Part shown: positions 2,351 through 57,376 of the stretch, one piece after another | How the letters are laid out: each line of letters opens with the position of its first letter | How positions within the stretch are numbered: position 1 is the first letter of the stretch | NCBI GenBank assembly: GCA_964304625.1 | Contig: OZ199839.1 | Coordinates: 9,792,671 to 9,856,670 of the forward strand | Length of the DNA: 64,000 nt | Reading direction: 5' to 3' | Origin: Kudoa neothunni | Taxonomy: Eukaryota > Animalia > Cnidaria | Position numbers and translations under genes: made by a program | The notes under the pieces: model-generated | Seen by the model: only the letters and a program-made list of their open reading frames with translations | Database searches by the model: none | What the model was told of the DNA's origin: nothing

Positions 2351-5328
2351 ATGAAGACAAACATGGTCTCATTTACCTTGATTGTTGCATTATTATGTAA
2401 TAAATTAAAATTCTAGATTCTTTTTAAACCATTTTAGGCATTAAGGAAGTTTTTGTGCTTGGAGCCACAGGTGCGGCTACCGAACCTGCCAAAGTTCTCA
2501 CCTATCGCATAGCAGACAGTGACAAAGTACATCTGACTTTATCTGGAACAACTTATGCTACATCAGAAAAAAAATGCCTTATAAGGAAAGAAAAGGAAGA
2601 TACGGTTGAATTTGACCATATAAATACATGTCCTAACAATGATAATTCACATGGGACTGGGAAATGTCTTCGTGCTTGCTCTGGAGATGATATCAAATTG
2701 TCGTTTGATAAGCTATCCCCCAGAACAAAATATGTCTATGTATATTCTGGGGATGGTGCCGACGCCATAAAAGAAAAGATCACTGGTGGAGATGTGTTTG
2801 GATTGCCTATACGTATTCTTCGTTTATTATATATATATAATTGATTGAGTTTAGCGCTATTGGTGAATCCAATCATCACAATATCCATACACGATTCAAC
2901 TAAATTGAAACTTGCAACAAAAACATGCCCCAAAGTCACTTGTCCAATTTATTACAAAGGTGTCCAATACGTCGCCGGTACCACTGGTGCTACTTGCGAA
3001 GCTGAAATTACAAATACAGTTGATTTTGACGTGCTGATACCTCACTATGAAATGAAATGTAAGAATTTACCAAGCTTCTTCTACCATATGCCAAATATAT
3101 ACATGAAAAAAAACATTGACATATATAAACCCCAATACTATGTGACCTATAAAGAGGGTGACAACGCAAAGACGAAATATCTCTTAAAGTTTACAAATGC
3201 TTTCCCATCAGAAATTTGTTTTTTTAATGTAAAAGATGCAGCGGCTAGCGCACAGGGGAGTGCGAATACCTATTCATCATCGTGCGGTGGTGATGCTGGA
3301 AAAAAATGTCATGCCCCATGTGATAATGTTGAATTGGAACTAGCTACATCCAAGCCGATCGTGAAAATATTAATTCAAACTCGACATCATAGATTAGAAG
3401 TAGCAAACAATCAATACGATGGTTATGAAGAGAAAAAATTTGGTAAGATTTCAGTCAATTTTAAGTAATCATCATTGAATTTTAGCTATTGTTGAGGCTA
3501 CAAGTGCAAGCACTCTTTTAACAACACATTCTGCCACTGGAGTAACAATTAACCGATCTCTCTACAATCCAAGCAATAATGAAAATAACGTAAAATTAGC
3601 TAATTGCGTATTAAAGTACTTTCCAGCTGATATACCAAGAACAACAGTGAGATCCGCGGCAAATTGTCAAAATACTGCGTGTCAAAATGATTGTTCAGTC
3701 AGCTCCACTATTGATGGATTGACTGCAGGAAAAGCATATATATTTGAAATAGCCCCTACTACCGATTTAGATAATTATACTGGTTTTAAAGAATATTTGT
3801 TTTTCAGAACAAGTAATTTAGCAAAGTTTACAATCATTATTACAATTTATTCTCAGCTAAAGCTAGCGCGTCAAATTACGTTACTACCTCTCCAACAACA
3901 ACCGACGTAACAGCTACATTAAAGGCGATTGACGGTAATGTGGGAACAGCATCAACCGAACCAACATGTGCATATTATTTCAGTGAACAAGGAAAAGGAA
4001 CATTTGTGGAAGCAGAATGTGAAGATAGTAAACCATGCAGAGGATTTTGTAGGGACATCAAGAAATTGATAAATCTAAATCCCAAAACAAATTATGATAT
4101 TAAGGTTGTTTCAAATAAAGACTATGGAATAAAAATATTTGAAAACGTCTCAACAAGTAAAAATATGATATTAAAATCTCATTTAATCTAATTTACGTTT
4201 GATAGCTTTTTCAACCCTCACTCTATCCCACAATTTCCTCGATAAAGGATTTCGAGTTGTTGGAAGATTAACAACTGCATATACAGAAGCAATATGTCAC
4301 TATAAACTTAAAGTTAAAAATGGAACTAGTTCAAATGTAGTTTATTCCTGCCCAACAATTGCCCCTTCTCCTCCACAGGACAACCCACCCAATACTAATG
4401 CTGTTCAATCTTCCACGAATCAAAATTTAGAACAATCTAATTTGATCAGTCATATAAATTCTTACAATAATAGAGTTGCAAGGGCAAGTGGTGTAGCTGA
4501 TTTAACTCCAAGTTCATCTACGAACACTCCAACTACGATTACTCCTACTGCGACTAATCAGTCTAAGTTCCCACCGTGCAATAAACCACCTCTATGCAGC
4601 AGCATAATAATCAGCGAGGGTTACGAGGCTGATAAAGAATACCAAGTATTGGTTACAGCTGTAGACAGATCGGAAGAAATTACCATCAATATTCCCAAAA
4701 GTATAATATTTATTTATCAAACTATAGAAAGTTCTAATATATCACACACAAATAGATGCTCTCCCTGAGAATCCTGAGGAAGTAGATAAACAAATCACAG
4801 TGATTATCGAAAGAGTTGGCGATACTTTAAAAATCACATCATTGCTTCCAAAACAAAAAAATGAAAATTCATTGTGTCGATGGATATTGAAAGATATGAA
4901 CGATCCTTCTTTACCAATAGTGAAAAAGTGTGACACTGTTGGAAGTAGTAGGTGTAAACTTCCAACATGTAAATCATTCACAATTGAGCGCGTAAGCGAT
5001 ACCAGTGATTATCATTTAACGGTTATTCACTCCCAAGACCCTACAATAAAAGGCGTTGGGAGAATTAAACAAGGTAGTTAACAATAAATTATTATTATTT
5101 TAATGATCAATATAGGAGAAACTTCTAATCAATCAAAGTAAAATTGTAAAATGATAATATTAAATTTGATTTAATTTTTAGGGCGAGCACGTCAATGTAT
5201 TTTTTAATTATTTGAGTATATTTTAATGAGATACCATACATTTTAGGATAATTGGAATTATTGTTCCGATTGTTATCGTTGTAGTAGCAGTTGGATTGTA
5301 CTTTGGTTACAAGAAGAATAAATCTTAG
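2351..5328 (+). CDS. Array copy 1: 10-exon type I membrane protein (855 aa) with Cys-rich FN3-like modules; type-A signal peptide MKTNMVSFTLIVALLC
   Basis: Exons 2351-2396, 2438-2812, 2855-3442, 3486-3812, 3857-4156, 4206-4700, 4756-5073, 5116-5137, 5182-5196, 5247-5328. All introns are GT-AG, 41-55 nt. Joined CDS is 2568 nt and open. Hydrophobic N-terminus; C-terminal TM and tail MIIGIIVPIVIVVVAVGLYFGYKKNKS*. Confidence 0.9.
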
Positions 5329-5359
5329 GAATCGATCTAAACATCAGCTTATTAGTCTT

Positions 5360-5365
5360 AATAAA
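5360..5365 (+). terminator. Putative polyadenylation signal AATAAA of copy 1
   Basis: About 30 nt after the stop and retained in most copies (altered in copy 3). The AT-rich background weakens it. Confidence 0.4.
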
Positions 5366-5934: not shown

Positions 5935-6007
5935 TGATCGAGGGTGGGATTAGAACCGGCGACCCATAACTTAAAAGGCAATGATGCTCTGCCGCTGATC
6001 GCACATT
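5935..6007 (-). pseudogene. Degenerate tRNA-Lys(TTT)-like relic or tRNA-derived SINE head
   Basis: Reverse complement reads CAGCGGCAGAGCATCATTGC-CTTTTAA-GTTATGGGTCGCCGGTTCTAATCCC: D-loop-like segment, CTTTTAA anticodon loop and B-box-like segment. Stems pair poorly. Confidence 0.5.
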
Positions 6008-6832: not shown

Positions 6833-9716
6833 CCCTTCCTATCCGATGTGGGGTATATTGGATACCCCAATATGATACTTTTTGTTATAATTCTTGACAC
6901 CTTAACATGGATGTCACAAAACTTTTTTAATGTTTGTATAATGTATTAAAGTTTAAGAAGGATGAAAATTAAATGAATATGGTGCAGTATATTTGTAAGA
7001 ATGAGGATTTTAAAATATGTCACTTACTAATATATCCGATTTTATCACCAAATCAATATTATAATTTTTTTAATTGTTTGTATATGTTAGGGCTTGTTGG
7101 CGCTAATCCGCCGATTACGCCAAAACCTCCGAGGAGGATCAGACAAACACGTTAGTATTATCGTAGATTTGGTTCAATGAGTTTTTCTAACGGCTTTAAC
7201 AGTATATGAGTTTTTATTGTTAAAATATCAATTATTTTTCTTTTAATGATAATAATGAAGTGTTACGGTTTTTACGCGCCGATAGAAGATCAACGGAAGT
7301 TAATCCATTCAGAGTTTTTGGGAAGGCACAGCTTGTTTCACTAAGTTTAATTTTTATCGATACTTGAGTATATTATTTTTTATTTATTTTTACTTATGTA
7401 CATCTTTATTTAAAATGATTTTGGAAATATGTTCGACGACGCCGAAAAATTAATTGAGGATTCTTCTTCCAGACAAGATGATTGTTCTGAGTTTATTGTA
7501 TCCAAATCAGAAGACTCTTTCGACGAAAATTTTTGTGAACAAGATGGTAGTTATAGCGATGAAGAAGAATTATTGGATCATTTGAAATATTTACCGATGA
7601 GTGAAAATTCAACATCTGTGCTTACTTCTCGATTTGGTTTCGAATGGTATACGAAACCTCCTACCAAAACGAAGACTGGTCTTCATAACTTTGTTTCGTC
7701 ACCATCTGGAATTATTAATGAGGCAAAAAATGTTAACAAAATTGTTGAAGCTTTCGAGCTCTTTATATCGAATGATATTGTCAACATTATAGCCAAATAT
7801 ACAAATATGTACTTTGATTGTATAGACAAAACCAAAGAAAGGATAACTATAGAAGGACTCAAATCCTTTATGAGTCTATAATTACATCCGGTCGCTCAAA
7901 TGGTTCCTCGTTTGCTCTGAGGAATGTATGGGATTCCAACCCATTATTTAAACAATTCCATTTTTTCACAGCCATATCAAGGGACAGATTTACTCTCATC
8001 TATCAAACAATGAGATTCGATGATAAATCAACCAGATCTGAACGTTTCCAGAAATTAAAAGATAAGCTTGATCCATTGCATGAAATATTACTCACCAGGT
8101 CCATATATAACGGTAGAAGAACGCCTGGTTCGTTTCAAAGGAAGATGTCCCTTCAGAGTTTTCATGAAGAGCAAACCAGGCCGTTACGGATTAAAATTTT
8201 GGGCGGCCGCTGATGTTGAAACTATAGTTATCTGTTGAACATCCATCCGTACACTGGTAAAGTAGACGGTAGCAGAGAAATTAACCAAGGAGAACGTGTT
8301 GTCACAGACCTCGTCAAACCTTTTTTCGGAACCGGTAGAGGAGTCGCCGTGGATAATTTCTTTACTTAGATTCCGCTTGCACAGAAACTTTTACGAAACA
8401 ATGTAACATTGACAGGAACGATTCGTTTCAACAAACCTGAAATTCCTAACGAATTCATGAGATCTCCAAAACGTGAAGTTTTTTCCACCTTATTTGGATT
8501 TAATGGTGATCTCACCCTAGTTTCCTACATTCCAAAAAAGAATTACGTGATGAATTTGTTGTTGAGTGAACACAATGATATTTCAATAGAAAATGAGGAA
8601 CGGAAACGGCCTTAAATTATCCTACATTACAATGCTACAAAAGGGGGTGTCGATAATGCGGATAAGATGACTTATTCATATTCCTGCTCCAAGCCTACGC
8701 GTCGGTGGCCCCTTAAAATGTTCATGGATATGAATGACATCGCAGCGTTGAATGCGTATATAATCTGGACAAAAAAATCCTGAATGGCGAAAAAACGACT
8801 GGAGCAAGCGGCAACATTTTTCGCGCCAATTATCAATTGAATTGGCTGAGATCAACGTTTTTAAACGTCAAATGATGTCCAATAACTATTCGACGAAATT
8901 AAAGTACGGCTTCGAACTATTTCAAAATCAAACGAATAATGATGATACATTTATTGAACGGTTAAGCTTTAAAAATCAATCTATGAGAAATAGATGCTAT
9001 TTCTGTCCACGTAATAAAGATAAAAAATCGAATATTCCCTGCTACAATTGCAATAAATTTCTTTGTTGGAATCATAGAAAACAAAAAAAAGTTGCATATT
9101 GTTCAGATTGCTTTGAATAGAATTTATTCCGTGTTGTTACTCAATAAACCCAAATTCTTTATGTTTATGCAAAACCATTACTATGCGATTTTAAAATGTT
9201 TCAATTATTTATATTGTAAAAATAAAATAGAATCGTAGTTTATCTAACTATCATTCGTTATTTTATAGCTTATTAAACTAAAATCTTAATTACCAAGAAT
9301 GTTAAAAAATTACCGCGAACTTTCAAAAATTCACCGGTTGTTTCCGAGAAACCCCGAAATGTAATAAATGGAGAGTAACATCGCAGGCCAGTATCTCAAT
9401 AGATAATGTGAGCACCAGCTTCTTTCGTCTTATTTTTTAATTTTAATGGTCTATTTATTGCTTATGTTTAAATTATATAACATCATGGCATATTATTTTG
9501 TTATATTAGTATCGCATGATAATTTTTCTAAAACCTTATAACATCTAATTAAATTCTAGTAATAAGTTAAGAATATCATGATTAAATTCTTTAAAATGCT
9601 TGCCTTCTAATAATGCATTAAGGGAAATTTAGCATAAGTTTATGGTCTTATTTTGCTGGGGTACGTCCCATATCCCATCGGAACGGGAGGATTTTTTTCG
9701 CGCATTACAGGGAGGG
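6833..9716 (+). mobile_element. piggyBac DNA transposon, decayed
   Basis: TTAA|CCCTTCCT ... AGGGAGGG|TCAA ends, subterminal GGGGTA..TACCCC palindromes, and transposase remnants inside. Confidence 0.85.
7429..9120 (+). pseudogene. piggyBac (PGBD4-like) transposase pseudogene
   Basis: Motifs MRFDDK, VRFKGRCPFRVFMKSKPGRYGLKFW, VDNFFT*, TGTIRFNK, YNATKGGVDNAD, RRWP and C-terminal Cys-rich RCYFC..CYNCNKFLCWNH. Several frameshifts and stops. Confidence 0.88.
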
Positions 9717-15333: not shown

Positions 15334-18300
15334 CAGAGGTGGCCAAACTTGCCCAGAACGGGAGTCAATTATAAGGTTGCCTAAATTTTCATCAGCCACA
15401 AAGAATTAAAATCATTTATGTAACATTTCCTTATTCAACCCTTTCACGTTCTATTTTTTGGTTTTTCTAAAAAAATATATATTGATAATTGGATATTTTT
15501 TAGTAAAAATATATAATTTTAATTTGAAAAATAATTATATCATGAAGATTTTTTAAATTTTGTTCATGTGCATTTAATTACACATTGGGACTAAATGATA
15601 AATAAAAGTTGAAAATGAATAAAATGTTCAAAGTAACTATTCAAACATTAGATTTAATGAATAATTATTTTAAATTTCAAAATTCATGAAACGTTATTAA
15701 CAAATAACCCTAAAACAGCATGTCTCCCATGAACCATCTCCAAATTTTTTTCATTTTTCTTAGTAATAATATATAAATTTATTTATAATGTCAACATAAT
15801 GTAATTTTTTATTTATAAATTTATTTTTTAACGCGTATTGGTTCGGTGTATTTAATTTCACTAAGATTAGAAGAAAAAATGACATAATAATTTGCAAGAA
15901 AATAACACACAAAATAATAAACGTACGGATTAATTCAACTTAATTAATTTCATTTTTGATGAAATTCGTAGAAACAATTCCTTTCTATAACCCGAAAACA
16001 ATTCGTTTTGCATTTAATGCATTTGAATGACATAATTTTTTGGACAAACTTTGCATCTATTACGTGTGGGCGTGCCTTCGGGGGAAGGCCCAACATTGTC
16101 GAATCAGATATCATCAGAAAGAGAGGGAACCACAATTTTCTGACTTATTGAATTCTTCAATTCACTTTCTACTGATAATGATGATTTCCCTCGCTTTAAC
16201 TTTACGTTTGTTTCCTTTTAAGAAACGTTAAAGACTCGTATTCTGAATAGGTGAAATTCAGTTAACCAAATATTTCGCTCTCTTCTATTTCTCTTTTATA
16301 ATACCCAAGAGTCCACCAAAGCTGTATTTATTCCTCAATAAAATATCCTCAAGTTAACATTTTAAACCGTTGTTTGGTTGGTTTTCCATGCACATGTTGC
16401 TTTGAACAGCACCTACCTTTAAATGATATCATCTGTTCATCTACAGGTAACTTCCTTTCGGGTTGAATCTTTAACCAATTTGATCTTAAATAGTCAAAAA
16501 ATTGTCTTATTTTCAAAAACCTACAAAAAAAGGATTGGATTGTTGAGTGACTATTTCGTCATTGTATTTTAAAATGAAGAAATCAACTCAAATCTACGGC
16601 GTATGAACACGTTAGCAATTGGCTCAAACTTAAAACATCTTTGCCAATAACAACGATATCTAGGCATCCTTATTATACCCATTAAAATGATAACTCCAAT
16701 AAACTTTTCTATTTCATCACTATCAGTTTTGAAACATGAATTAGATCGGCTGAAATAAAGGTTTTTTTGTTCAACCATCGAATCTATGAAAGATTTATTC
16801 ATAAATTGGTTGAAGTAATCGATAGGAATAAAAAGTCCATTTATTTCTTCAAAATATCACTCTGAATTCTCATAATCAACATTATTATTTAATGTTAAAA
16901 TCTATATAATCCAATTATATTTGAAGTTCGAGTTGTATTTTTCTTCGTCGGTAACCTCATTATGGTTTTCTGAGTATTCATCGCATTTTTCAAAAATATC
17001 GATATTTTTATTTTCTAAACAGATCTCCGGTTCTAAAATATTAGGATCGGGCATATTGACTACTTTTTGTCCTATTTCTCCACTTTTTGCAGATAAATCC
17101 GAAATATTGTAATTCATTTCTTCATCACGTGTGTTCCACGGAATCCCAATGTGCATTTAAATGCACAAGCTCTAATACCCAAATAGCTATTTATTCTTAA
17201 AATCTTTTTATATATTTTATTATTTGTTATGAAAAATTCAAATTAATTTTTAAAGTTGACGTTGATAATGAACACTGATCAATTCTATGTGTGTAATCTT
17301 TCACGTTTGGAGCATGCTCTATATATAGATGAAAAACATAATATTTTCTTACATTTTCAAGGAAAATTATTCATACTTTTAAATAATGATGACAATTAAG
17401 TATTGATTGTGATACATCAAACATATTGAATGAAACAGTAGTTAAGTGTATTAAAAGATTGCGTTTTTCTTACGTGCATTCAAACGCACACTGGACGCGA
17501 AAGGGTTAAACTTACATTTTTGGAAAGTTTTGGGTAAATAATAAGATATATTTATGTAGAAATATAAATAAAGGTCTTTATTTCTTTCTTATTCAGTTAC
17601 TCGCTGGAAAACTTTCATATAATTTTTATAGGTATAATTTATGATGGTTTTTCCAAAAAGGTTTATTAGGTGTTAATAATCCAAGAAACTTTTTATCCAT
17701 GAAAAATATCGCAAAAAAAATTAAATTAATTACGTGCGAATTAAATAATAACACAAGAATTTAATGCATTCGAACAAATTATTTTTAGAAATTGTTTCTA
17801 ATATTACAAGTTTTTTATGTTCCAATATTATCGGTGTGCTGGCGGTAATCTGCTTCGTAAGCTGTTAGTGCTGGATAAATTAGTTCCTGCAGGTGTTTGT
17901 TTGGGAGGGAGGGAACCGCGATGCTTCGATTTTGCAAACTTCATCATTGAAAAAATGCAGACAACACTAAGTTTTTCCAATGAAAACAAAAAGTGTTTGA
18001 GGCAAATTTATTTTTATTTTTAATATTTATTTTCTGTAACATATTTCCAAAGATCGTTGGATGAGTTGGAATCATGAATCATCCTTAAAACTTTAATACG
18101 TGTTTTATTCTTTCGATATCTATCATTTTTGTAATGGATAAACCCTAGTTCTAATTGCATTTCCTAATGTAACTAGTAATAATTCTAGTTTTTATTGAAT
18201 ATTAAAACTGTTTGGTAGACTATAACTATGTTTTCTAATCAAAAATATTATCTAGTTCACGATTTAAGAGTTTATTTCTTCACTAGATTACATAGTTTGA

Positions 18301-39594: not shown

Positions 39595-39631
39595 AGTTGA
39601 CTTTGGTTAAAACTATTATACCAACAATTAA

Positions 39632-39780: not shown

Positions 39781-39782
39781 TA

Positions 39783-41791
39783 CAGTCGGTGACCATTAAT
39801 TCGTACTCCCCTCGGGGACGGAGAAAATTACGAATTATACGTCAGTAACGTCTAATTCGTAATGGCTTTGTGCGCGCGTGAAAAAAATAGCATGAAAATT
39901 TTGATTTTATTAATTTTTAAGGCTTTCTAAAGTAATCTGTTATTTTTGATTGTATTTGAGTTTTTCAATATACTCATACACATATGATTCTAATTTAGCT
40001 AATTCATCACCTAAAAAGTAGCACCAGCACCTTTGAAAAATATTTTCAAATTTTCTACAAAAATTATAGCATCTTTAGAAGTGAATTTAGGCTCCACAGG
40101 TTCGTCCTCTACCTCTTCAGGCTCGCTAACGATTTCCTCGTATGAGATGTTCTCTAAATTATCACATATGGGAAACAAACTTTCTTCGATACCTAATTCA
40201 TCGACTTCTAGAGATGTGGAACTATCTGGAGATAAAATTGTATTGGAATTTTCTGGTTCATTTACGGATGTTTTTAAGCCGAAACCAGATTTAGAAAAAC
40301 AATTAATAATTGTTTTAGGAACTATTGAATTCCAAGTATCCTTAATAAGAGTCATTGCTTCCCATAAATCTAGAGGTTTTATATCCAGTCCTATTTCTGC
40401 ACGGAGCGTATATTGCCTCGTTAAGTTTTTCCGGTATGTTGCCTTAAATGAACGAATAACACCTTGATCCATTGGTTGTAGGACCGATGTGGTGTTTTTG
40501 GGAAAATATACTATTTGAACGTTGGAGAGTTCCATGTGTTGATGGCAACTTGCATTGTCCATAAAAAGAACGATTTTTTTGTTTCTACTTCTGAAAATAC
40601 TGTTAAGTTTTAACAGATAATTTCTAAAAATGCTTGCTGTCATCCAGCCTTTCGTGTTGTACTCATAGGGAACTGGAGTATTATTTATACTTTTAAAGCA
40701 TCTAGGTCGGGCATAATGACCTATCACTAAGAGGTCTAGCTTTTCACCATTCACTGAGGCTCCAAGTAGTAATGTAATCCTTTTTTTTGACTTTTTACCA
40801 CAAGACATATTATTTTCAATAGCAGAAACGTAACTTTTTTCCTATAATAATATAGATAAATACTTGAGCAAAAAGAATTGATTGTAGAATATTGTATAAT
40901 TTCGATCATAACGAAAAAATAATGAAGTACACATTTGGCGCCCACAAAATAATCATATTGTGGAAGTAATACTATTAACAAAAAATTTTTCATTTAATGT
41001 ATGTAAAAATATCTGATCGAAACAAAAATAACCATTTTTAGGAAAAACTTACGAGGCGTTGATTGATGGAACAGCGCGGTCTCGTCGACATTGTATATTT
41101 GATCCTCTTTATAATTTTCAAGAATTTTAATTAGTTGAGTCTTCCATTCTGTGATGATTCCTATGGGTACCATGTTAGCATCCCCATGAAAGCTAACTTT
41201 TTTTAATTGAATCTATTTTTAAAAGCCGCGAAACCATCCGTAGCTAACATTTTTGAAATCGTCATCAGAAGCACCGATCTCATTAATTTATTAATTATTT
41301 CGATGGACGATAATTCGATACTTTTCGACCTCATCCAAATGAACCACTCATAAACACGTTGATCGACTTCATATTTTCCTTTCCGCATTGATCTTCGTTG
41401 GGATGGAAGCAATTGATTCTCAAATGCTTGTGTAATTTTAGCACTTTTTTCTAAAATGCCATTCAATGTTGAAATATAACCTATTTTGAAGTGTTTGATA
41501 GTTTCTGTCTTTCTATTTAAGGGCGGCAAACTATCATAATATTTAATTACGTCATATTTTTCCTGAAATGTTGTTCCGAATTTGTGAATTCTTTTTTCGG
41601 GCATTTAGAAATAATTACAAATTATCGGTTAATACACACTTTTAAAACTTTTTATTTGACAAAATAAAAAAATAACTCGTATATTTAATTAACAACTAAT
41701 AATAAACGTTATTTGACAAATTTAACCGAATGGATAGAGTTTTAAGGGATGTTACGAATTATCGGTTCTACGAATTAACGGTCATCTACTG
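39783..41791 (-). mobile_element. Tigger/pogo (Tc1-mariner superfamily) transposon with a frameshifted transposase
   Basis: TA|CAGTCGGTGACCATTAATTCGTA ... TACGAATTAACGGTCATCTACTG|TA. CENP-B-like HTH (41604-41203), NVDETAL, and DDE_1 motifs KGWMT, MDNASCH, PKNTTSVLQPMDQGVI (40808-40011). Confidence 0.92.
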
Positions 41792-41809
41792 TATTTGGTT
41801 AAAATTGTC

Positions 41810-44720
41810 GGTAAAGGGAGAGTACCCAGTTCCAAAAATTCGGCATCTTCCCGTACACGCGCATTGCCGATTGGTTTATAATTTAATTTAACACATTTTT
41901 AAAATATTGAGTGATCACAAATCAGACCCAAATTTTTATTTTGAAGAGTTGCAAAAAAAACACTTTGGCAACAATCGGGAAGCGCGCAATGTAATGCGCA
42001 TACCTTTTCATAACCTTTTTCAGCCTAATTTGTCATAAATAATTCATGAAATTTATATTTTTAATTTTTATAATATTATCGAATATGTTCTCGCGATTAA
42101 AGAATCACACAGGATAGGAGATATTTTATTTAGTGGTGTTTTGAATTTTCGATAATTATAGATGTAATAATAACTGTTATATTTATATCTCACGTTAAAT
42201 TTAAAAAATTTATGTGTTTTTATAATTTAATCCGATTAACAATAGTTTTTTCGATGGCGGAATTTTCAATTCAGCGTCAATTTTATAAACTTTTGTTTAA
42301 CGTGAGTGCTCTATTTACTTACCTAGCGAATAAGGGACTATTACAAAAAATGCCTGCTCGGTGCAAGAATTGCCACGGGCATAACACTCTACGCCTCCAA
42401 GTTACAACGAGAAAAGAAACAATACTTCAATCGATCTTTGTGACGATGATATTGAGAAATACTCGTATACATGTTCAAAGTACTTTTATTTTATGTGTAG
42501 TTTTTAAAATATTAATTTTAGGAATGATTGTAGAACGCATTTTTCACTCAGGGCCTCTACCTTCTTTGGCATCAATAACGCGATGGGGACGAATGTATCC
42601 AAATTAGCAGTGTCTCAGCTATTTGAGTACTATACATTTGGTGTATTGAAGAACAAAGATGCAGGGTGGTAGTATTAACTCAAATAACCGAGAAAATGGG
42701 CGGAGAAAATCGAATCGTCGAAATTGACGAATGTTTATTAAGAGGTCGCCGTAAAAACAACCGGGGAAGATTTTTAAGCATAGACAGATTGTTGGCCACC
42801 CCTAACTATTTCTTAAGGAGTAGGTTATTCCGTGGAGCGATTCCTTTGAGACGTCAGCGGAGAAATGAAAGGTATGGTTACAGAATAAACGGCCCTTGGG
42901 TTGTTGGCATTTGCTAATGCTCTATCGATGAAGATGGCAAACGCAAATTGTTAGAATCAAGATTTTTTATTGTCCAAAAAAGGGATAAACGAACGTTGAC
43001 CCAACTCGTCTTACAGGAAGTTGAAAACGGGATTACAATCTATACTGACGAGTGGTTGGGGTACACCTCTCTCCGAATTTACGGCTATAACCATATAACC
43101 GTTAATCACTCTAAAGAATATGTCACTCCAGAGGGTTACCATACTAATACGGTCGAGGTTGTGTGGCGTCATCTCAAAACAAAACTCATTCTGAAAATGA
43201 GCGTTGTGCCACGAAATTAGCTGGATTCCAACCTACATGAATCATGGTCGCGTTCCATTCATAAAGGATATTGGAATTTCTTCGAATATATTGTAACAGT
43301 TATCGCTACTATTTACCAATTAAATAATAGCTAATGAAACAAAATATTTGTGTTTTGATTCCTTTCATCTTTTATATACTGCTATTTGTCAAAAAAACTT
43401 AAGAAAACTTTAGATTTTACCATATTAGTATTAACTATAAAATTAAAATTATATTTGCAGTAAATATATTTGAGATTTCTCGCGCATTTTCGTTTAATGA
43501 TAATAAATTAAAATATATGTTTATGATTTACCGCTAAGGCTTTATTAATGAAAAAATATTTTTTCTTTATAAATGAAATTAGATTATGAAACTTTTTTTA
43601 AGAAAAACTAATTTTTAATTTTTGACTCACAATTGTTTCTCAGTCTTGATAATTAATACGATTATACAGTACATTAACTATGAATTATAGTTATCACGGA
43701 TCGTTACTCAAAGTATTCAATTATATTTGTACAAACCAACATTAAATTTTTTTTTGACTTATTTATAATCTAATTATAAATAGTTAACGAATTATTCATT
43801 ATATTGTCTGTAATATCATAAGGTTTTCAATTTCTTCAATATGGTTTGTTCGGTATACCGTTGTATATTTAATATAAGTACATCAACAAAATATATGAAC
43901 TAAAAAATAAAGTTGTAAGTAACAATTAAGAGTCGTTAACGTAAAAAATGAAAACTTAAGGTTACACAACAATAAATAACTGGCATATATCCTTTCGGTT
44001 CAATTTCATTAATAATTCACAGAACATATTTGATAATATTATAAAAATTAAAAATATAACTTTCACGAATTATTACGAAAAATATCTTGGTGAAAAACTA
44101 TATCAAATAAAAACTTATAAAGAGTTCTAACGAAATCATTTTATAAAAACGTATAAAACAGCAAATTTATGGATTTCATATATAATATTAAAAGTTTATG
44201 TGAATTAATTCTTAATTATTATGCTTTAGAAAGAATATTAATAATACATGTGATATATCTGTGGATTAGCTTACTTTAAAATTGGTTTGGAATATTAAAA
44301 ATAATATATAAACTAAAAAATTTCATGATAAACGACTTTGCACAAGCAGAGAGCTAGAACAATTTGGCAGACGAAATTAATACACTTTAGTTATTTCGTG
44401 CAACTATGAACTGCTATTTTTACTTTCTGCAACGTTCCGACTATTCATATTAAATTTAAGCAAGGCAAAAACACACTTAATCATGAGTAATATGTTAAAT
44501 TCATATGGAAAATAGAACAAAACTACCTTGCGCATTCACATGCACACGCACCGATTGAAGCCGAACGTGAATTTTAGCAAAAGTTTTAGAAGTGAATTAT
44601 GAAGCGAATTGTTGTTCGGCCAAAAGTTTAAAATAGTGAATAATTGATTTGAAATAAAATCGGGATTGTCAGACATGCGTAAGAGGGTGAAAAATGGGAG
44701 CTGCACACTCCTCCATTACC
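41810..44720 (+). mobile_element. Merlin (IS1595/ISXO2-like) DNA transposon, decayed; boundaries tentative
   Basis: GGTAAAGGGAGAGT left end and ACTCCTCCATTACC right end (imperfect TIR, no TSD seen), with a transposase inside. Confidence 0.6.
42254..43260 (+). pseudogene. ISXO2-like (DDE_Tnp_IS1595) transposase pseudogene
   Basis: IVEIDEC, WVVGIC*, IYTDEWLGY, HITVNHS, HTNTVEVVWRHLK; in-frame stops. Confidence 0.88.
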
Positions 44721-45651
44721 GTTCTTAGTAATAAAACGAGCATATAATTTTATACGTAATTTTTTACGTATTGAAATTGAATGTATAATTTTCTAGATTT
44801 AATTAATAACAAAATCAACATTTATTTTTTAATGTAATTGTTACTTAAGACTATTAAAATCTACAGCATTATAATGACAATCAAAACGTAAAATCTATAA
44901 TTTATGATGTTAGTCATTCCGAATAATTTACAATATCGACAGATAAAATATAACGAATAATTTTAGTAGGCATTTTTATTAATGTGAGTCTTCCGAAAGC
45001 CGAATTGATAAATTTACAATCAAAATTTCAAAAAATGACCAATGTTTCAGAGAGATGATTCGATGAAAATAAAATTTAATGGGAGACAGAATTATCCAAG
45101 TAGCAAGAGTTCTTACTGACACATTAATATATTTTTTACTGTCAATATAACTCATTCCATACGAAATTTGAAAATTAGTTTCAATTGATTAACTATATTT
45201 TTTCCAACATATTTTCTAGAGAATAATAAAAAATGAATTAATTTTAACCCAGCTGCTACACTACATACTGCGTTGATCTTGTTGATACAAAATCCAAAGT
45301 TTTCTTAGAAAAATTACTCTTAATAGTTGTTTTTTCATTATAACGACGAAGAGCCATTTGTCCAACTTTTTATTCTAATCAGCTCCTTTTTATCCGTTTC
45401 AGCCAGATATTGCATACACCATTCAAAATGAAGCCAAATGATAATTATTCCATATCTTTATTTAACATTAATTTTTCGTAAAGGATTACATAAAATACAT
45501 GCTGAGGTAGTCTTGTAAAGATTGTAAAATTCTAATAACTTAAATAACCCGAATAATCACAATTTTTAGATAGTATTAACTCTTTCATGAATAGTTATTG
45601 TTTATTGATACCATAAAATATATAATCTATTATATAGTCTATTTTATATAA

Positions 45652-48620: not shown

Positions 48621-51600
48621 GAATCGATCTAAACACCAGCTTATTAGTCTTAATAAAACAATATTATTATTTCTTAAAGATTTTGAATTTTAGTATTCAA
48701 TATAATTCAATGTTTTTTTAATAATAAAATGATGTAAAGTCTATGGCATATTATAATTTAATCAACCTCAGAATCATCCCAGATATATAGTTTTATTCAA
48801 TATTTGCCGTCATACTAATTTCTTAATTAAACCCAATAAGTAAAAATAAATATTTTTTAAAATTTTAAAAATTCCCATCAAATACATTAAATCAAAAATT
48901 TTTGTCCTGTTTACAAAATTTTGACAAATAAATTTGAGACCGTAATTTTCGACGTTTATTTTCGAAAAATTCGGCGCTTAAATAAAAAGGTGTGCAATCG
49001 TGCAAAACTCAAAATGTTCCTAGAGAATATATATATATTTATTTAAATATTAATTATTTAGTTTTAAATTAAAATATAATATTGAAAATATTTTTCATTA
49101 TTCACTTGTGAGATTGGTCCTATCAATTGTGATAAATGATAATTGTATACACATCAAATTTTGGTATATTTCTGAAAAAATAGAATATTTTAATTTGGTT
49201 GATTAATAACTTAATTCTATCTATAATATCACTCTCAGGAGAAGAAAATGAAATAGCTTACGTTATAATTTTTCATTTATATTCGTATCAAGAAAATTTG
49301 AATTATCATTTGGATCCACGTCTATTATTTTCACATCTCTTTACATCAACATTCACTTTAACATTGTTTTTTGTATGAAAATTCTCTAGAAATTATGTAT
49401 GATTTATGCTTGTTTCCGATAATTTTAAAATTAAAATATCAATAAATCTTTGTATCAATTAAATTTTTTTTATTTTAATACAAAATATTAAGTGCTTAAA
49501 TTATTGAATATTTAATAGCTACCTCAAATATTTGTAACGTCTCATTTCTTGATTTAAAAAAGTGTAACTGCTGATTTATAAAAAACGTCATTTAATGAAA
49601 ACTAACATAATAGAATTGGAATGTAAGAAATTTATCAAAAGTTGATTTAATTTTATCTAAACTCCGTAAATTTAAATAATTTTAATTAGGCATGAATCCA
49701 ATGCAAACAGGTCATTATTACCCCTAAATTTTTTGGATAATAATCTTTTTGAATAAAAAGTTATGAATAAATTACAATAAAATCATGATAATTCTTTCAT
49801 TAATCGTAGTATCACTGATATTAAGTGTGAGTAAAAAATTTAGTTATATCTTGGCTAAGATAAAAAAATAGAGAATCTAAGTAAAGATACCTAATATTAA
49901 TTTAGTAAAATTAGTCATATCCATATAATTATAAATGTCTTCAATAAATTAGATTTTTATTCATGAAAAGAACGTTATTTTTATCTTGAATAGTTATTGT
50001 TTATTCATCGCATAAAAATATAATCAGATTTATTCATTATTTCATAACAATGAGAGCAATATTGGCTTTGTTAGTATTGTTTATAACTTTGTTTAGTATT
50101 TTTCTACTTTTAAAACCCTTATTATATTTCAGTTAGATAGGGTTAAGTATTCTGTTAGTGCAGCTGAAGTTACGACTACCGAACCTGCAAAAATTCTTAA
50201 TTACAACATAGTAGCTAGCAATAAAGTGCGTCTGACTTTATCTGGAACAATTTATGCTGAATCAGATAAAAAATGCCTAATAAGAAAAGAAAAGGAAGGT
50301 ACAGTTGAATTTGACCAGATCAATACATGTGATGGAAGTGATAGTGATCATGGAACTGGGAAATGTCTTCGTGCTTGTTCTGGAAATATCGAATTGGCAT
50401 TTAATATCTTATCACCCAGAACAAAATATGTCTATGTGTTTTCGGATAATGATGCTGCCACAATGAAAGAGAAAAATAATGGCGGAGATGTGTTTGGGTT
50501 GTCTACACGTATTTTACGTAGAATTTATATATTAAATTAATTGCGTTTAGCGTTGTTGGTGAATCCAACAGTCACAATATCCTTACACGATTCAATTAAA
50601 TTGAAACTTGCAATTAAAACAAGTCCAAAGGTGAATTGTCCTATTTATTACAAGGGTGTCCAATATGCAGTCGGTACCACTAGTGGTACTTGTGAAACTG
50701 ATATTAATAATACGGTTGATTTTGACGTGTTAATACCTTATTATGAAATGAAATGTGTAAGTTATCCAAGCTTCTTCTACCATATGCCAAATACATACAT
50801 GAAAAAAAACATTGATATATATAAACCACAATACTATGTGACCTATAAAGAGGGTGATGACGCAAAGACAAAATATCTCCTAAAATTTACAAATTCATTT
50901 CCATCAGAGATTTGTCTTTTTAATGTGAAAGATGCAGCGACTAGCGCAGGCACGAATAAATATGAATCATCGTGTGGCGGTGAGGTCGGAAAAAAATGTT
51001 ATGCACCATGTGATAATGTTGAATTGGCGCTTGCTACATCCAAGCCGATCGTGAAAATATTAATTCAAACTAGATACCATAAATTTGGAGTGGATGAGAC
51101 TAGCGATGATGGTTATGAAGAGAACAAATTTGGTAAGGTTTCAGTCAATTTTAACTAGTTATCATTAGTATTAGCTATTGTTGAGGCTGAAAAAGAAAAC
51201 ACTCTTTTAACAGCACATTCTTCTACTGGAGTTACAATTAATAGATCCCTGTATAATCCAGGGAATAATAATGTTAAATTCACGAATTGTGCTTTAAAAT
51301 ACTTTCCAGCTGATGTACCAAGATCCTCCGCGGGAACATCAATCAATTGCTCAGATGTTGCATGTGGAAGCGAATGCACAGCCAGTGCCACTATTGGTGC
51401 TTCCATTGCAGGAAAAGCACATATAATTGAAATAACTTCTACTACCCCTATAACTAATTATCCTGAATTTAAAGAATATTTGTTTTTCAGAACAAGTAAT
51501 CAGACTGATATTTCATAGTATATAATTATTTTAGCCCCAAAACAAGGTTCAGATTTCGTTACTACCACTCCCACAACAACCGACGTAACAGCTACATTAA

Positions 51601-54600
51601 AGGCAGTTGACGGTAATGTGGGTACAGCATCCACCGAGCCTACATGTGCATATTACTTGAGTGAACAAGGAAAAGGAACATTTGTGGAAGCAGAATGTGA
51701 AGATAGTAAACCATGCAGAGGATTTTGTAGGGACATCAAGAAATTGATAAATCTAAATCCCAAAACAAATTATGATATTAAGGTCGTTTCAAATAAAGAG
51801 TATGGAATAAAAATATTTGAAAATGTCTCAACGAGTAAAAATATGACATTGCCATTTCATTTAATTTACGGTTGATAGTTTTTTCAACCCTCACTCTATC
51901 CCACAATTTCCTCGATAAAGGATTTCGAGTTGTTGGAAGATTAATAACTGCATATCCAGAAGCAATATGTCACTATAAACTTAAAGTTAAAAATGGAACC
52001 AGTTCAGATGTAGTTCATTCCTGCCCAACAATTGCCCCTTCTCCTCCACAAGCCAACCCACCCAATACTAATGCTGTTCAATCTTCCACGAATCAAAATT
52101 TAGAACAATCTAATTTGATCAGTCATATAAATTCTTACAATAATAGAGTAGCAAGAGCGAGTGGCGTAGCTGTTATAACTCCAAATTCATCCGCCACCAT
52201 TCCAACTACGATTACTCCTACTGCGACTAATCAATCTAAGTTTCCACCATGCAATAAACCACCTCTATGCAACAACATAATAATCAGCGAGGGTTACGAG
52301 GCTGATAAAGAATACCAATTATTGGTTACAGCTGTGGACAGATCGGAAGAAATTACCATCAATATTCCCAAAAGTACAATATTTATTTACCAAATTATAA
52401 AAAGTTCTAATATATCACTCACAAATAGATGCTCTCCCTGAGAATCCTGAGGAAGTAGATAAACAAATCACAGTGATTATCGAAAGAGCTGGCGATACTT
52501 TAAAAATCACATCATTGCTTCCAAAACAAAAAAATGAAAATTCATTGTGTCGATGGATATTGAAAGATATGAACGATCCTTCTTTACCAATAGTGAAAAA
52601 ATGTGACACAGTCGGTACTAATAGGTGTAAACTTCCAACATGTAAATCATTCACAATTGATGGTGTAAGCGATACCAGTGATTATCATTTAACGGTTATT
52701 CACTCCCAAGACCCTACAATAAAAGGCGTTGGGAGAATTAAACAAGGTAGTTAACAATAAATTATTATTATTTTAATGATCAATATAGGAGAAACTTCTA
52801 ATCAATCAAAGTAAAATTGTAAAATGATAATATTAAATTTGATTTAATTTTTAGGGCGAGCACGTCAATGTATTTTTTAATTATTTGAGTATATTTTAAT
52901 GAGATACCATACATTTTAGGATAATTGGAATTATTGTTCCGATTGTTATCGTTGTAGTAGCAGTCGGATTGTACTTTGGTTACAAGAAGAATAAATCTTA
53001 GGAATCGATCTAAACACCAGCTTATTAGTCTTAATAAAACAATATTATTATTTCTTAAAGATTTTGAATTTTAGTATTCAATATAATTCAATGTTTTTTT
53101 AATAATAAAATGATGTAAAGTCTATGGCATATTATAATTTAATCAACCTCAGAATCATCCCAGATATATAGTTTTATTCAATATTTGCCGTCATACTAAT
53201 TTCTTAATTAAACCCAATAAGTAAAAATAAATATTTTTTAAAATTTTAAAAATTCCCATCAAATACATTAAATCAAAAATTTTTGTCCTGTTTACAAAAT
53301 TTTGACAAATAAATTTGAGACCGTAATTTTCGACGTTTATTTTCGAAAAATTCGGCGCTTAAATAAAAAGGTGTGCAATCGTGCAAAACTCAAAATGTTC
53401 CTAGAGAATATATATATATTTATTTAAATATTAATTATTTAGTTTTAAATTAAAATATAATATTGAAAATATTTTTCATTATTCACTTGTGAGATTGGTC
53501 CTATCAATTGTGATAAATGATAATTGTATACACATCAAATTTTGGTATATTTCTGAAAAAATAGAATATTTTAATTTGGTTGATTAATAACTTAATTCTA
53601 TCTATAATATCACTCTCAGGAGAAGAAAATGAAATAGCTTACGTTATAATTTTTCATTTATATTCGTATCAAGAAAATTTGAATTATCATTTGGATCCAC
53701 GTCTATTATTTTCACATCTCTTTACATCAACATTCACTTTAACATTGTTTTTTGTATGAAAATTCTCTAGAAATTATGTATGATTTATGCTTGTTTCCGA
53801 TAATTTTAAAATTAAAATATCAATAAATCTTTGTATCAATTAAATTTTTTTTATTTTAATACAAAATATTAAGTGCTTAAATTATTGAATATTTAATAGC
53901 TACCTCAAATATTTGTAACGTCTCATTTCTTGATTTAAAAAAGTGTAACTGCTGATTTATAAAAAACGTCATTTAATGAAAACTAACATAATAGAATTGG
54001 AATGTAAGAAATTTATCAAAAGTTGATTTAATTTTATCTAAACTCCGTAAATTTAAATAATTTTAATTAGGCATGAATCCAATGCAAACAGGTCATTATT
54101 ACCCCTAAATTTTTTGGATAATAATCTTTTTGAATAAAAAGTTATGAATAAATTACAATAAAATCATGATAATTCTTTCATTAATCGTAGTATCACTGAT
54201 ATTAAGTGTGAGTAAAAAATTTAGTTATATCTTGGCTAAGATAAAAAAATAGAGAATCTAAGTAAAGATACCTAATATTAATTTAGTAAAATTAGTCATA
54301 TCCATATAATTATAAATGTCTTCAATAAATTAGATTTTTATTCATGAAAAGAACGTTATTTTTATCTTGAATAGTTATTGTTTATTCATCGCATAAAAAT
54401 ATAATCAGATTTATTCATTATTTCATAACAATGAGAGCAATATTGGCTTTGTTAGTATTGTTTATAACTTTGTTTAGTATTTTTCTACTTTTAAAACCCT
54501 TATTATATTTCAGTTAGATAGGGTTAAGTATTCTGTTAGTGCAGCTGAAGTTACGACTACCGAACCTGCAAAAATTCTTAATTACAACATAGTAGCTAGC

Positions 54601-56990
54601 AATAAAGTGCGTCTGACTTTATCTGGAACAATTTATGCTGAATCAGATAAAAAATGCCTAATAAGAAAAGAAAAGGAAGGTACAGTTGAATTTGACCAGA
54701 TCAATACATGTGATGGAAGTGATAGTGATCATGGAACTGGGAAATGTCTTCGTGCTTGTTCTGGAAATATCGAATTGGCATTTAATATCTTATCACCCAG
54801 AACAAAATATGTCTATGTGTTTTCGGATAATGATGCTGCCACAATGAAAGAGAAAAATAATGGCGGAGATGTGTTTGGGTTGTCTACACGTATTTTACGT
54901 AGAATTTATATATTAAATTAATTGCGTTTAGCGTTGTTGGTGAATCCAACAGTCACAATATCCTTACACGATTCAATTAAATTGAAACTTGCAATTAAAA
55001 CAAGTCCAAAGGTGAATTGTCCTATTTATTACAAGGGTGTCCAATATGCAGTCGGTACCACTAGTGGTACTTGTGAAACTGATATTAATAATACGGTTGA
55101 TTTTGACGTGTTAATACCTTATTATGAAATGAAATGTGTAAGTTATCCAAGCTTCTTCTACCATATGCCAAATACATACATGAAAAAAAACATTGATATA
55201 TATAAACCACAATACTATGTGACCTATAAAGAGGGTGATGACGCAAAGACAAAATATCTCCTAAAATTTACAAATTCATTTCCATCAGAGATTTGTCTTT
55301 TTAATGTGAAAGATGCAGCGACTAGCGCAGGCACGAATAAATATGAATCATCGTGTGGCGGTGAGGTCGGAAAAAAATGTTATGCACCATGTGATAATGT
55401 TGAATTGGCGCTTGCTACATCCAAGCCGATCGTGAAAATATTAATTCAAACTAGATACCATAAATTTGGAGTGGATGAGACTAGCGATGATGGTTATGAA
55501 GAGAACAAATTTGGTAAGGTTTCAGTCAATTTTAACTAGTTATCATTAGTATTAGCTATTGTTGAGGCTGAAAAAGAAAACACTCTTTTAACAGCACATT
55601 CTTCTACTGGAGTTACAATTAATAGATCCCTGTATAATCCAGGGAATAATAATGTTAAATTCACGAATTGTGCTTTAAAATACTTTCCAGCTGATGTACC
55701 AAGATCCTCCGCGGGAACATCAATCAATTGCTCAGATGTTGCATGTGGAAGCGAATGCACAGCCAGTGCCACTATTGGTGCTTCCATTGCAGGAAAAGCA
55801 CATATAATTGAAATAACTTCTACTACCCCTATAACTAATTATCCTGAATTTAAAGAATATTTGTTTTTCAGAACAAGTAATCAGACTGATATTTCATAGT
55901 ATATAATTATTTTAGCCCCAAAACAAGGTTCAGATTTCGTTACTACCACTCCCACAACAACCGACGTAACAGCTACATTAAAGGCAGTTGACGGTAATGT
56001 GGGTACAGCATCCACCGAGCCTACATGTGCATATTACTTGAGTGAACAAGGAAAAGGAACATTTGTGGAAGCAGAATGTGAAGATAGTAAACCATGCAGA
56101 GGATTTTGTAGGGACATCAAGAAATTGATAAATCTAAATCCCAAAACAAATTATGATATTAAGGTCGTTTCAAATAAAGAGTATGGAATAAAAATATTTG
56201 AAAATGTCTCAACGAGTAAAAATATGACATTGCCATTTCATTTAATTTACGGTTGATAGTTTTTTCAACCCTCACTCTATCCCACAATTTCCTCGATAAA
56301 GGATTTCGAGTTGTTGGAAGATTAATAACTGCATATCCAGAAGCAATATGTCACTATAAACTTAAAGTTAAAAATGGAACCAGTTCAGATGTAGTTCATT
56401 CCTGCCCAACAATTGCCCCTTCTCCTCCACAAGCCAACCCACCCAATACTAATGCTGTTCAATCTTCCACGAATCAAAATTTAGAACAATCTAATTTGAT
56501 CAGTCATATAAATTCTTACAATAATAGAGTAGCAAGAGCGAGTGGCGTAGCTGTTATAACTCCAAATTCATCCGCCACCATTCCAACTACGATTACTCCT
56601 ACTGCGACTAATCAATCTAAGTTTCCACCATGCAATAAACCACCTCTATGCAACAACATAATAATCAGCGAGGGTTACGAGGCTGATAAAGAATACCAAT
56701 TATTGGTTACAGCTGTGGACAGATCGGAAGAAATTACCATCAATATTCCCAAAAGTACAATATTTATTTACCAAATTATAAAAAGTTCTAATATATCACT
56801 CACAAATAGATGCTCTCCCTGAGAATCCTGAGGAAGTAGATAAACAAATCACAGTGATTATCGAAAGAGCTGGCGATACTTTAAAAATCACATCATTGCT
56901 TCCAAAACAAAAAAATGAAAATTCATTGTGTCGATGGATATTGAAAGATATGAACGATCCTTCTTTACCAATAGTGAAAAAATGTGACAC
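48153..56990 (+). repeat. Near-perfect tandem duplication, period 4381 bp
   Basis: ORF pairs 50226/54607, 50541/54922, 51618/55999 and 51872/56253 have identical translations at a constant offset of 4381. The spacers look identical. Confidence 0.92.
50050..53001 (+). CDS. Array copy 7 (type B; hybrid with a copy-8-like 5' part and copy-6-like 3' end)
   Basis: ATGAGAGCAATA at 50050. ORFs match copy 8 up to exon 7, then GTNRCKL...DGV as in copy 6. Stop at 53001. Confidence 0.86.
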
Positions 56991-57376
56991 TGTTGGAAGT
57001 AGTAGGTGTGCACTTCCAACATGTAAATCATTCACAATTGAGGGCGTAAGCGATACCAGTGATTATCATTTAACGGTTATTCACTCCCAAGACCCTACAA
57101 TAAAAGGCGTTGGAAGAATTAAACAAGGTAGTTAACAATAAATTATTATTATTTTAATGATCAATATAGGAGAAACTTCTAATCAATCAAAGTAAAATTG
57201 TAAAATGATAATATTAAATATGATTAATTTTTAGGGCGAGCACGTCAATGTATTTTTTAGTTATTTGAGTATATTTGAATGAGATACCATTTAGGATAAT
57301 TGGAATTATTGTTCCGATTGCTATCGTTGTAGTGGCGGCTGGATTGTACTTTGGTTACAAGAAGAACAAATCATAA
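54431..57376 (+). CDS. Array copy 8 (type-B 5' end; 3' end and downstream flank match copy 2)
   Basis: ATG at 54431. Exon 7 GSSRCAL...EGV and the TM variant PIAIVVVAAG with TAA stop are as in copy 2. Confidence 0.86.

What the first reader, a model, noticed from the sequence alone, without database searches (positions are those of the whole stretch)
2351..57376. Tandem array of eight intact, diversified single-pass surface proteins: candidate undescribed variant antigen or receptor system
Seen: eight same-strand paralogues with conserved splice sites and no stops noticed in exons, while every transposase around them is broken. Each has a signal peptide, a long Cys-rich ectodomain, one TM helix and a 5-6 aa tail with no signalling domain. 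Established: a variable ectodomain on an invariant anchor with a short tail is the design of parasite variant coats such as Giardia VSPs, and FN3 surface antigens occur in cestodes (EG95 family). These are analogies, not claimed homologies. Inference: an antigenic-variation, adhesion or allorecognition repertoire in a compact-genome animal. I do not recognise the family.
Basis: partly seen in the sequence, partly recalled or inferred. Interest (0 to 1): 0.92.

Follow-up and report, generated by a model that had tools for sequence, protein, structure and literature searches.

The report
Huge FN3 surface-protein repertoire in Kudoa
A fish-muscle parasite (almost certainly the myxozoan Kudoa neothunni, a tiny relative of jellyfish) carries at least 200 genes for one undescribed cell-surface protein whose outer parts are reshuffled between copies; it is a good candidate for the suspected but unexplained antigen variation of these parasites, but no expression data exist yet.

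Summary
Observation confirmed: eight same-strand 10-exon genes, all GT-AG, 850-855 aa, no internal stops, 77-99% identical, among fragmented transposases. The genome matches Kudoa neothunni (40.2 Mb, three chromosomes, one TAAACC telomere). The eight belong to an 11-gene array in a family of at least 200 loci. Each protein has a signal peptide, six four-cysteine FN3-type modules plus one small Ig-like module (D5 folds as FN3, Z 9.4), one TM helix and a 5-aa basic tail. At 3.3% Cys with no CxxC it is not a VSP; it is not EG95 or Alr. No named homologue was found, only unnamed relatives in five other samples. Copies are recombination mosaics: D1-D4 diverge while the upstream DNA and D6-tail are homogenised, also at synonymous and intron sites; g8 is a g7/g2 hybrid. 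dN/dS is 0.2-0.5; positive selection was not shown once recombination was modelled. A conserved [IV]AR motif in the D6 insert may be a cleavage site. Best reading: a variable host-interface coat (about 50%); programmed switching is untested because no RNA reads exist. This scan noted the same family in other windows of this genome.

The parts
2351..5328 (+). g1, type A leader; 10 exons, 855 aa
11430..14386 (+). g2, type A; first ATG changed to ATT, second ATG used; 850 aa
21332..24289 (+). g3, type A; 853 aa; 96% identical over its first 1.3 kb to the next array gene beyond the window
31447..34412 (+). g4, type A; 852 aa
35888..38845 (+). g5, type B leader (different signal exon and upstream DNA); 853 aa
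45652..48620 (+). g6, type A; 854 aa; upstream 1.5 kb is 99-100% identical to that of g1
50050..53001 (+). g7, type B; 850 aa
54431..57376 (+). g8, hybrid gene: 5' part identical to g7, 3' end and 7 kb downstream nearly identical to g2; 850 aa
2351..2396 (+). g1 exon 1, signal-peptide core
   Evidence: hydrophobic N-terminus; no dedicated predictor run
2438..2812 (+). g1 exon 2, module D1 (four Cys, spacing 17/11/3); variable
   Evidence: fold inferred from Cys pattern and weak profile links
2855..3442 (+). g1 exon 3, D2 (small Ig-like sandwich, about 80 aa) plus D3 (FN3-type, Cys spacing 21/7/3); variable
   Evidence: AlphaFold pLDDT 84.9; Foldseek and VIA hits to tandem FN3/Ig proteins
3486..3812 (+). 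g1 exon 4, module D4 (Cys 19/4/3); most variable, 63% mean aa identity
3857..4156 (+). g1 exon 5, module D5; FN3 fold
   Evidence: Pfam fn3 in 21 of 26 family members, best E 1.6e-5; model pLDDT 89.4; VIA Z 9.4
4206..4700 (+). g1 exon 6, module D6 with a 75-aa S/T/P-rich insert (4352-4576) between Cys2 and Cys3
4472..4486 (+). RVAR/A motif in the D6 insert; an [IV]-A-R motif is kept across the family; candidate protease site
   Evidence: cleavage itself is inference
4756..5073 (+). g1 exon 7, module D7 (Cys 17/7/4); 96% mean identity within the array
5116..5196 (+). g1 micro-exons 8 (22 nt) and 9 (15 nt), juxtamembrane stalk
   Evidence: same layout in dispersed copies; not confirmed by RNA
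5247..5328 (+). g1 exon 10, TM helix and 5-aa basic tail
56400..56990 (.). crossover interval of the g7/g2 hybrid (inside exons 6-7 of g8)
7414..9117 (+). fragmented piggyBac-like transposase
   Evidence: (DDE_Tnp_1_7, E 0.015)
15950..17156 (-). fragmented piggyBac-like transposase, duplicated at about 58940-60146
   Evidence: class from my reading of the motifs
25928..27721 (-). fragmented hAT-like transposase
   Evidence: class from my reading, no Pfam hit
40014..41604 (-). fragmented pogo-type transposase
   Evidence: Pfam DDE_1 E 1.5e-38
42134..43217 (+). fragmented IS1595/Merlin-like transposase
   Evidence: class from my reading of the motifs

Best explanation
The eight genes are working members of a Kudoa surface-protein repertoire of at least 200 loci. 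Each protein is a type I membrane rod of seven beta-sandwich modules (six four-Cys FN3-type, one small Ig-like) on a 5-aa tail that cannot signal by itself. Shown: architecture, FN3 fold of D5 and two-sandwich fold of exon 3, copy number, purifying selection on the framework, and ongoing unequal crossover and segmental gene conversion that homogenise upstream DNA and the membrane-proximal D6-TM part while D1-D4 stay diverse and mosaic. Inferred: the proteins sit on the plasma membrane of fish-stage or worm-stage cells as a host-facing coat. The membrane-distal loops carry the epitopes seen by host antibodies or receptors. Different members are expressed in different stages, cell generations or clones, giving antigenic change. 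The conserved [IV]AR motif in the D6 loop is cut, so a variable head stays held on a constant stalk and can be shed.
For: Eight intact models. At least 200 distinct exon-3 loci by hand union, against 5,316 annotated genes in a repeat-masked annotation. Same exon order, TM and short basic tail in 23 dispersed copies and in another organism. Only 4 PTP matches genome-wide. Divergence gradient: aa identity 63-78% in D1-D4 versus 91-99% in D6-tail; dS 0.46-0.73 versus 0.07-0.10. Upstream non-coding DNA about 92% identical, above D1-D4 at 69-83%. Mosaicism: neighbouring-site incompatibility 0.314 versus 0.562 +/- 0.008 shuffled. Hybrid g8. Stage-specific antigens in K. thyrsites and suspected antigenic variation in myxozoans are reported with no known mechanism (PMC8481699; S. 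molnari preprint).
Against: No transcript evidence: the two RNA runs laid hold no reads, which is no test. Positive selection not shown: M2a versus M1a gave 29.2 on per-domain trees but 0.9 on 30-codon trees, and neutral 15-codon mosaics reached 34.5. No expression site, silent-cassette archive or switching signal was seen; most copies look like complete genes. The spore-forming stage lives inside muscle cells, partly shielded from antibody (PMC8481699). The insert with the AR motif is absent in the relative in L023.
Confidence: 0.5

Rival explanations
1. Host-recognition or adhesion receptors: each member binds a different fish or annelid ligand (endothelium, myocyte, matrix), and the family sets host range and tissue tropism. 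Diversity is for ligand coverage, not escape.
For: Tandem FN3/Ig rods are the build of adhesion molecules; top structural hits are contactins, NCAM, DSCAM and fibronectin. Subfamilies are old and kept across species: P0001 from another sample nests inside one subfamily. Purifying selection dominates.
Against: At least 200 copies with rapid mosaic shuffling is more than ligand coverage usually needs. No RGD motif. No cytoplasmic domain to couple adhesion to the cytoskeleton.
Confidence: 0.22
2. Parasite self/non-self or cell-identity code, like Hydractinia Alr or clustered protocadherins: homophilic, isoform-specific binding sorts kin cells in cell-in-cell stages and plasmodia.
For: Myxozoans are cnidarians. 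Alr genes are a clustered family of single-pass proteins with one domain per exon and an FN3-like fold (PMC9546547). Variation here is membrane-distal.
Against: Alr proteins have 1-3 V/I-set Ig domains, one FN3-like domain and mostly long tails with ITAM/ITIM motifs. Here there are six FN3-type modules, another Cys pattern and a 5-aa tail. Loci are spread over all three chromosomes.
Confidence: 0.12
3. A bulk structural coat or spore-surface protein amplified for dosage. Diversity builds up by drift and birth-and-death in a repeat-rich genome, and the polarity is a by-product of conversion failing once a region has diverged.
For: About 28-31% of D1-D5 codons behave neutrally and positive selection was not shown. 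Flanks are full of transposon remnants. Three of about 23 sampled copies are frameshifted.
Against: Dosage families are usually homogenised throughout. Here the distal domains stay 20-35% divergent between neighbours whose flanks are 99-100% identical.
Confidence: 0.12
4. Part of the array (g7/g8 identity, the g2/g8 downstream block, g1/g6 upstream identity) is haplotype duplication or a mis-join in a low-coverage assembly.
For: The paper reports about 7x k-mer coverage and purged haplotypic duplication. Stretches of 100% identity over several kb.
Against: Affects at most one or two copies. The other genes differ by 15-23%. Contig depth at the 3' end is about 46 versus about 7 in unique parts, so identical 3' ends are multi-copy in raw data, though probably from the same individual.
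Confidence: 0.04

Closest known systems
Diplomonad VSPs and the 18 S. molnari 'VSPs' (bioRxiv 10.64898/2026.02.11.705288)
   Same: Signal peptide, large variable ectodomain, one TM helix, short conserved basic tail; family of about a hundred or more genes in a parasite
   Different: VSPs are defined by high Cys (>10%; 5% filter) and many CXC/CXXC motifs. These have 3.3% Cys, no CxxC, and exon-bounded FN3-type modules
Cestode EG95/45W oncosphere antigens (PMC2671473)
   Same: FN3-domain surface antigens encoded by a parasite multigene family
   Different: EG95 is described with one FN3 domain and a GPI anchor. These have seven modules, a TM helix with basic tail, a four-Cys staple and at least 200 loci; no sequence hit
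Hydractinia Alr allorecognition family (PMC9546547)
   Same: Cnidarian, clustered paralogues, single-pass, one domain per exon, FN3-like fold with unusual invariant Cys
   Different: Alr has 1-3 V/I-set Ig domains, one FN3-like domain, six invariant Cys in another layout, and mostly long tails, many with ITAM/ITIM motifs
Tandem-FN3 cell-surface receptors (contactin, NCAM, DSCAM, class I cytokine receptors, receptor PTPs)
   Same: Fold of D5 and of exon 3; D5 keeps the FN3 E-F motif
   Different: No Ig-I/V, PTP or kinase domain, no WSxWS; hits are fold-level (10-20% identity) and name no ancestor
Mosaic antigen systems (trypanosome VSG, Pneumocystis MSG, Borrelia vls; from my own knowledge)
   Same: Variable distal part on a conserved membrane-proximal part, shuffled by segmental gene conversion
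   Different: Those have a dedicated expression site and silent archive. Here each copy has its own leader exon and upstream DNA; no switching has been shown

Membership tests
Fibronectin type III superfamily (D5) | Seven-strand FN3 beta-sandwich and fn3 profile match | tested here: met
   Pfam PF00041 in 21 of 26 members, best E 1.6e-5; VIA Z 9.4, rmsd 3.2, 91 aligned to contactin FN3
Fibronectin type III superfamily (D1, D3, D4, D6, D7) | FN3 fold or profile match | tested here: inconclusive
   D3 aligns to FN3 domains at Z about 6.5; D4-D5, D6-D7, D3-D7 link weakly (hhalign E 6e-5 to 4e-4); no Pfam fn3 hit for D1, D3 or D7; D1, D4, D6, D7 not folded
VSP (diplomonad; S. molnari VSP-like) | Cys above 5-10% and more than 5 CXC/CXXC motifs | tested here: not met
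   3.2-3.4% Cys, 0 CxxC; definition
VSP (diplomonad; S. molnari VSP-like) | Signal peptide, one TM, short conserved C-terminal motif | tested here: met
   the tail does not match the reported [KR]X[KR]XK[KR] signature
VSP-type antigenic variation | One member expressed per cell, with switching | not testable with these tools
   no parasite RNA reads in the runs laid; the paper also found too few
EG95/45W | One FN3 domain with a GPI anchor | tested here: not met
   seven modules; TM followed by a basic tail
Hydractinia Alr | 1-3 V/I-set Ig domains plus one FN3-like ECS, six invariant Cys, signalling tail | tested here: not met
   no direct sequence comparison with Alr proteins was possible
Receptor protein tyrosine phosphatases | Cytoplasmic PTP domain | tested here: not met
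   stop codon 5 aa after the TM in all eight genes and short tails in dispersed copies; only 4 PTP matches in the genome
Class I cytokine receptors | WSxWS motif and cytoplasmic Box1 tail | tested here: not met
   no WSxWS; the Foldseek hits have TM-score about 0.3
Positively selected variant antigen | dN/dS above 1 at exposed sites | tested here: inconclusive
   LRT 29.2 falls to 0.9 on block trees; 0 of 40 nulls with 30-codon mosaics but 2 of 24 with 15-codon mosaics reach 29.2

The most novel reading that the evidence does not exclude
An animal parasite runs protist-style antigenic variation: a repertoire of 200 or more FN3-based coat proteins, expressed one or a few per cell, diversified by segmental gene conversion of the distal domains and shed by cleavage in D6. 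This would be a first molecular system for the antigenic variation suspected in myxozoans.
Probability: 0.25. Interest if true: 0.92.

Novelty: new variant of a known kind. Interest (0 to 1): 0.74.

Why it matters
Myxozoans have lost most animal genes, yet this one keeps at least 200 loci for one surface protein, a number equal to about 4% of its annotated gene count. I found no mention of the family in the genome paper or in myxozoan literature searches; the annotation was run on a repeat-masked genome with homology hints only, which may have hidden it (inference). Fish develop immunity to Kudoa and stage-specific antigens are known, but the molecules at the host interface are not. The family gives concrete targets: the constant D6-D7 stalk for detection or vaccine work, and the variable D1-D4 for asking whether a metazoan parasite switches its coat.

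Tried and rejected
Sphaerospora molnari as source: rejected (40 contigs, 7 chromosomes, CYAACY end repeat). Orthonectid or dicyemid: dropped once assembly size, N50 and telomere matched K. neothunni. Pfam on the six single exons of g1: nothing above cut-off. The search for homologous proteins: exon-3 profile no hit, P0016 only itself, exon-5 profile one unnamed fragment; these searches see only proteins of 0.55-1.75 times the query length. ESM Atlas: no hit above 0.83; Atlas fold search best TM 0.58 to unrelated sandwich proteins. PDB sequence search with the D7 profile: none. A mixed exon-2/exon-3 alignment (A2) mis-registered D1 on D3 and was not folded. Site-model positive selection: rejected as unproven. 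Invariant furin RxxR site: not family-wide (2 of 17 in-frame copies with the insert), though [IV]AR is kept. Sample accessions of the outside relatives could not be tied to species. Joined CDSs were built only inside scripts, for frame and divergence checks.
Full report
Observation. Self-comparison shows eight copies of a 3-4 kb unit on the + strand. Aligning them and splicing in a script gave eight 10-exon genes with all nine introns GT-AG, 37-55 nt long, in the same places and phases (seven phase 1, then two phase 2). They give 850-855 aa proteins with no internal stop, 77-85% identical except g7/g8 at 99%. Each has a hydrophobic leader exon, six large exons, two micro-exons (22 and 15 nt) and a last exon with one hydrophobic helix and the tail KKNKS. 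g2 has lost its first ATG and uses the second. The transposase remnants between the genes all lie in several short frames.

Organism. The genome has 40.26 Mb in 4 contigs. C1 is 17.15 Mb, and C2 ends at 12.04 Mb in the only (TAAACC)n tract. Weber et al. (PMC12239612) report for Kudoa neothunni 40.2 Mb, N50 12.0 Mb, three chromosomes, a mitochondrial contig, 30.4% GC, 49-nt introns and one TAAACC telomere. I take the genome to be K. neothunni, a myxozoan cnidarian from yellowfin tuna. The 18S fragment looks Kudoa-like from my memory only.

Family size. The exon-7 domain returns 304 candidates and the exon-3 profile 348; the 150 scored are all strong (exon 3: E below 1e-55). A distant query adds 51 loci, so at least 200 distinct exon-3 loci exist by my hand count, on all three chromosomes, many in tandem clusters. 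A 17-base motif matches 121 times versus 5 for the control. The window is the middle of an 11-gene array (C2 about 9.785-9.872 Mb) that includes one broken copy upstream, and its genes group together in the exon-3 tree (support 90/99). Twenty chromosome-1 loci show the same exon order, a TM exon and a short basic tail; three of about 23 copies have frameshifts. The published annotation has 5,316 proteins, was made on a RepeatMasker-masked genome, and the paper never mentions such a family.

Relatives. They come from five other samples. Their contigs (GC 17-39%) keep the module order, and one keeps the TM and a KKK tail. One nests within a K. neothunni subfamily, and others lie outside all of them. 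The family is therefore older than this species; I infer other myxozoans but could not identify the samples. No named homologue appeared, with the length limits of that search in mind.

Structure. Exons 2, 4, 5, 6, 7 and the second half of exon 3 each carry four Cys with spacing about 16-21 / 4-11 / 3-5. D5 matches Pfam fn3 in 21 of 26 members and FN3 proteins in the PDB by sequence. Its model (pLDDT 89.4) aligns to contactin, ROS1 and fibronectin FN3 domains at Z 9.2-9.4. Exon 3 folds as two sandwiches, a small Ig-like D2 and an FN3-like D3. The modules link only weakly to each other, so FN3 identity is shown for D5, likely for D3, and inferred for D1, D4, D6 and D7. Disulfide pairing is inferred from the invariant Cys. 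D6 has a 75-aa S/T/P-rich insert between Cys2 and Cys3. Across 17 in-frame K. neothunni copies the insert is very variable but all keep an [IV]-A-R motif, 16 at the aligned place and mostly with a basic residue at P4 or P6. That fits a proprotein-convertase-type site by my own knowledge; strict RxxR occurs in only two. Cleavage there would give a variable head held on a constant stalk, as in the insulin receptor's FN3 insert (analogy, not homology). The relative in L023 lacks the insert.

How the array evolves. Mean aa identity rises from 63-78% in D1-D4 to 81, 91, 96 and 99% in D5, D6, D7 and stalk/TM. dS falls from 0.46-0.73 to 0.07-0.10, and intron identity rises from 73-81% to 92-100%. The constant anchor is thus produced by homogenisation of DNA, not only by protein constraint. 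Upstream non-coding DNA (about 92%) is also more uniform than D1-D4 (69-83%). Nearest neighbours change along each gene, and neighbouring informative sites are far more compatible than shuffled ones (0.314 versus 0.562 +/- 0.008). g8 is identical to g7 for 3.2 kb and then nearly identical to g2 and its downstream 7 kb, an unequal crossover in exons 6-7 unless it is a mis-join. Two leader types exist (A: g1-g4, g6; B: g5, g7, g8). A divergence peak between homogenised flanks is what selection against conversion would leave, but it can also persist passively. dN/dS is 0.23-0.48 in every module. My site-model test gave an LRT of 29.2 on per-domain trees, but 0.9 on 30-codon trees (where simulated selection gave 6-22), 10-15 after removing suspect columns, and neutral 15-codon mosaics reached 34.5. 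Positive selection is not shown. The most variable residues sit in loops between predicted strands.

Expression. The runs holding this DNA behave as DNA, probably from the assembly individual; two RNA runs have no reads, which is no test. Splicing and transcription are unverified.

Mechanism. The most likely role is a variable host-facing coat (0.5): no signalling tail, a huge and mostly intact repertoire, mosaic distal domains, and a host group where stage-specific antigens (K. thyrsites) and antigenic variation are suspected without a mechanism (PMC8481699). Rivals are host-ligand adhesins (0.22), an Alr-like self-recognition code (0.12), a dosage-amplified structural coat (0.12), and partial assembly artefact (0.04). 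It works like VSP- or VSG-type repertoires in design but fails membership tests for VSP, EG95, Alr, receptor PTPs and cytokine receptors.

Novelty and verdict. Paper searches found no description of this family. I rate it a new variant of a known kind: a parasite variant-surface repertoire, here in an animal and built from four-Cys FN3-type modules. The scan's own notes record the same family in other windows of this genome; they are unchecked AI notes and are not counted as support. Interest 0.74.

Noticed in passing
window 53680-64000 versus 49300-52500 and 13400-21000: g8 is a g7/g2 hybrid, and the 7 kb after it, including a broken piggyBac, is nearly identical to the DNA after g2: a very recent unequal crossover or a haplotype mis-join.
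   Followed up: partly
window 1-2000 versus 43296-45300: Upstream DNA of g1 and g6 is 97-100% identical, while their D1-D4 exons are only 75-87% identical.
   Followed up: partly
window 63398-64000 and G000:C2:9864130: The upstream unit of the next array gene starts at the window end, but its gene lies about 7 kb further than in the g2-g3 copy, implying an insertion just beyond the window.
   Followed up: no
G000:C2:9785629-9786214: The array gene just upstream of the window has stops and a frame change in exon 3, with exon 7 identical to g1.
   Followed up: no
L001:1940-1960 (G000:C2 about 5.4267 Mb): The only 18S match covers model positions 1158-1823 and is cut off by unrelated AT-rich DNA: a truncated rDNA unit, or the rDNA array is not assembled.
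   Followed up: no
L007, intron after exon 7: This copy appears to use a GC-AG intron where the others have GT-AG, and its exon 7 is frameshifted.
   Followed up: no
G000:C3:2961522 and 2976712: Two identical-scoring tyrosine phosphatase loci 15 kb apart, a possible recent duplication or haplotig.
   Followed up: no
C1 16.3-16.9 Mb, C3 0.05-0.95 Mb, C3 10.1-11.0 Mb: About 63 of the 200 loci lie within 1 Mb of a chromosome end (15% of the sequence) by hand count; clusters are not independent, so no test was made.
   Followed up: partly
L024 (SRR33849685): A very distant relative reads through about four modules in one 479-aa frame, unlike the intron-split K. neothunni genes.
   Followed up: no
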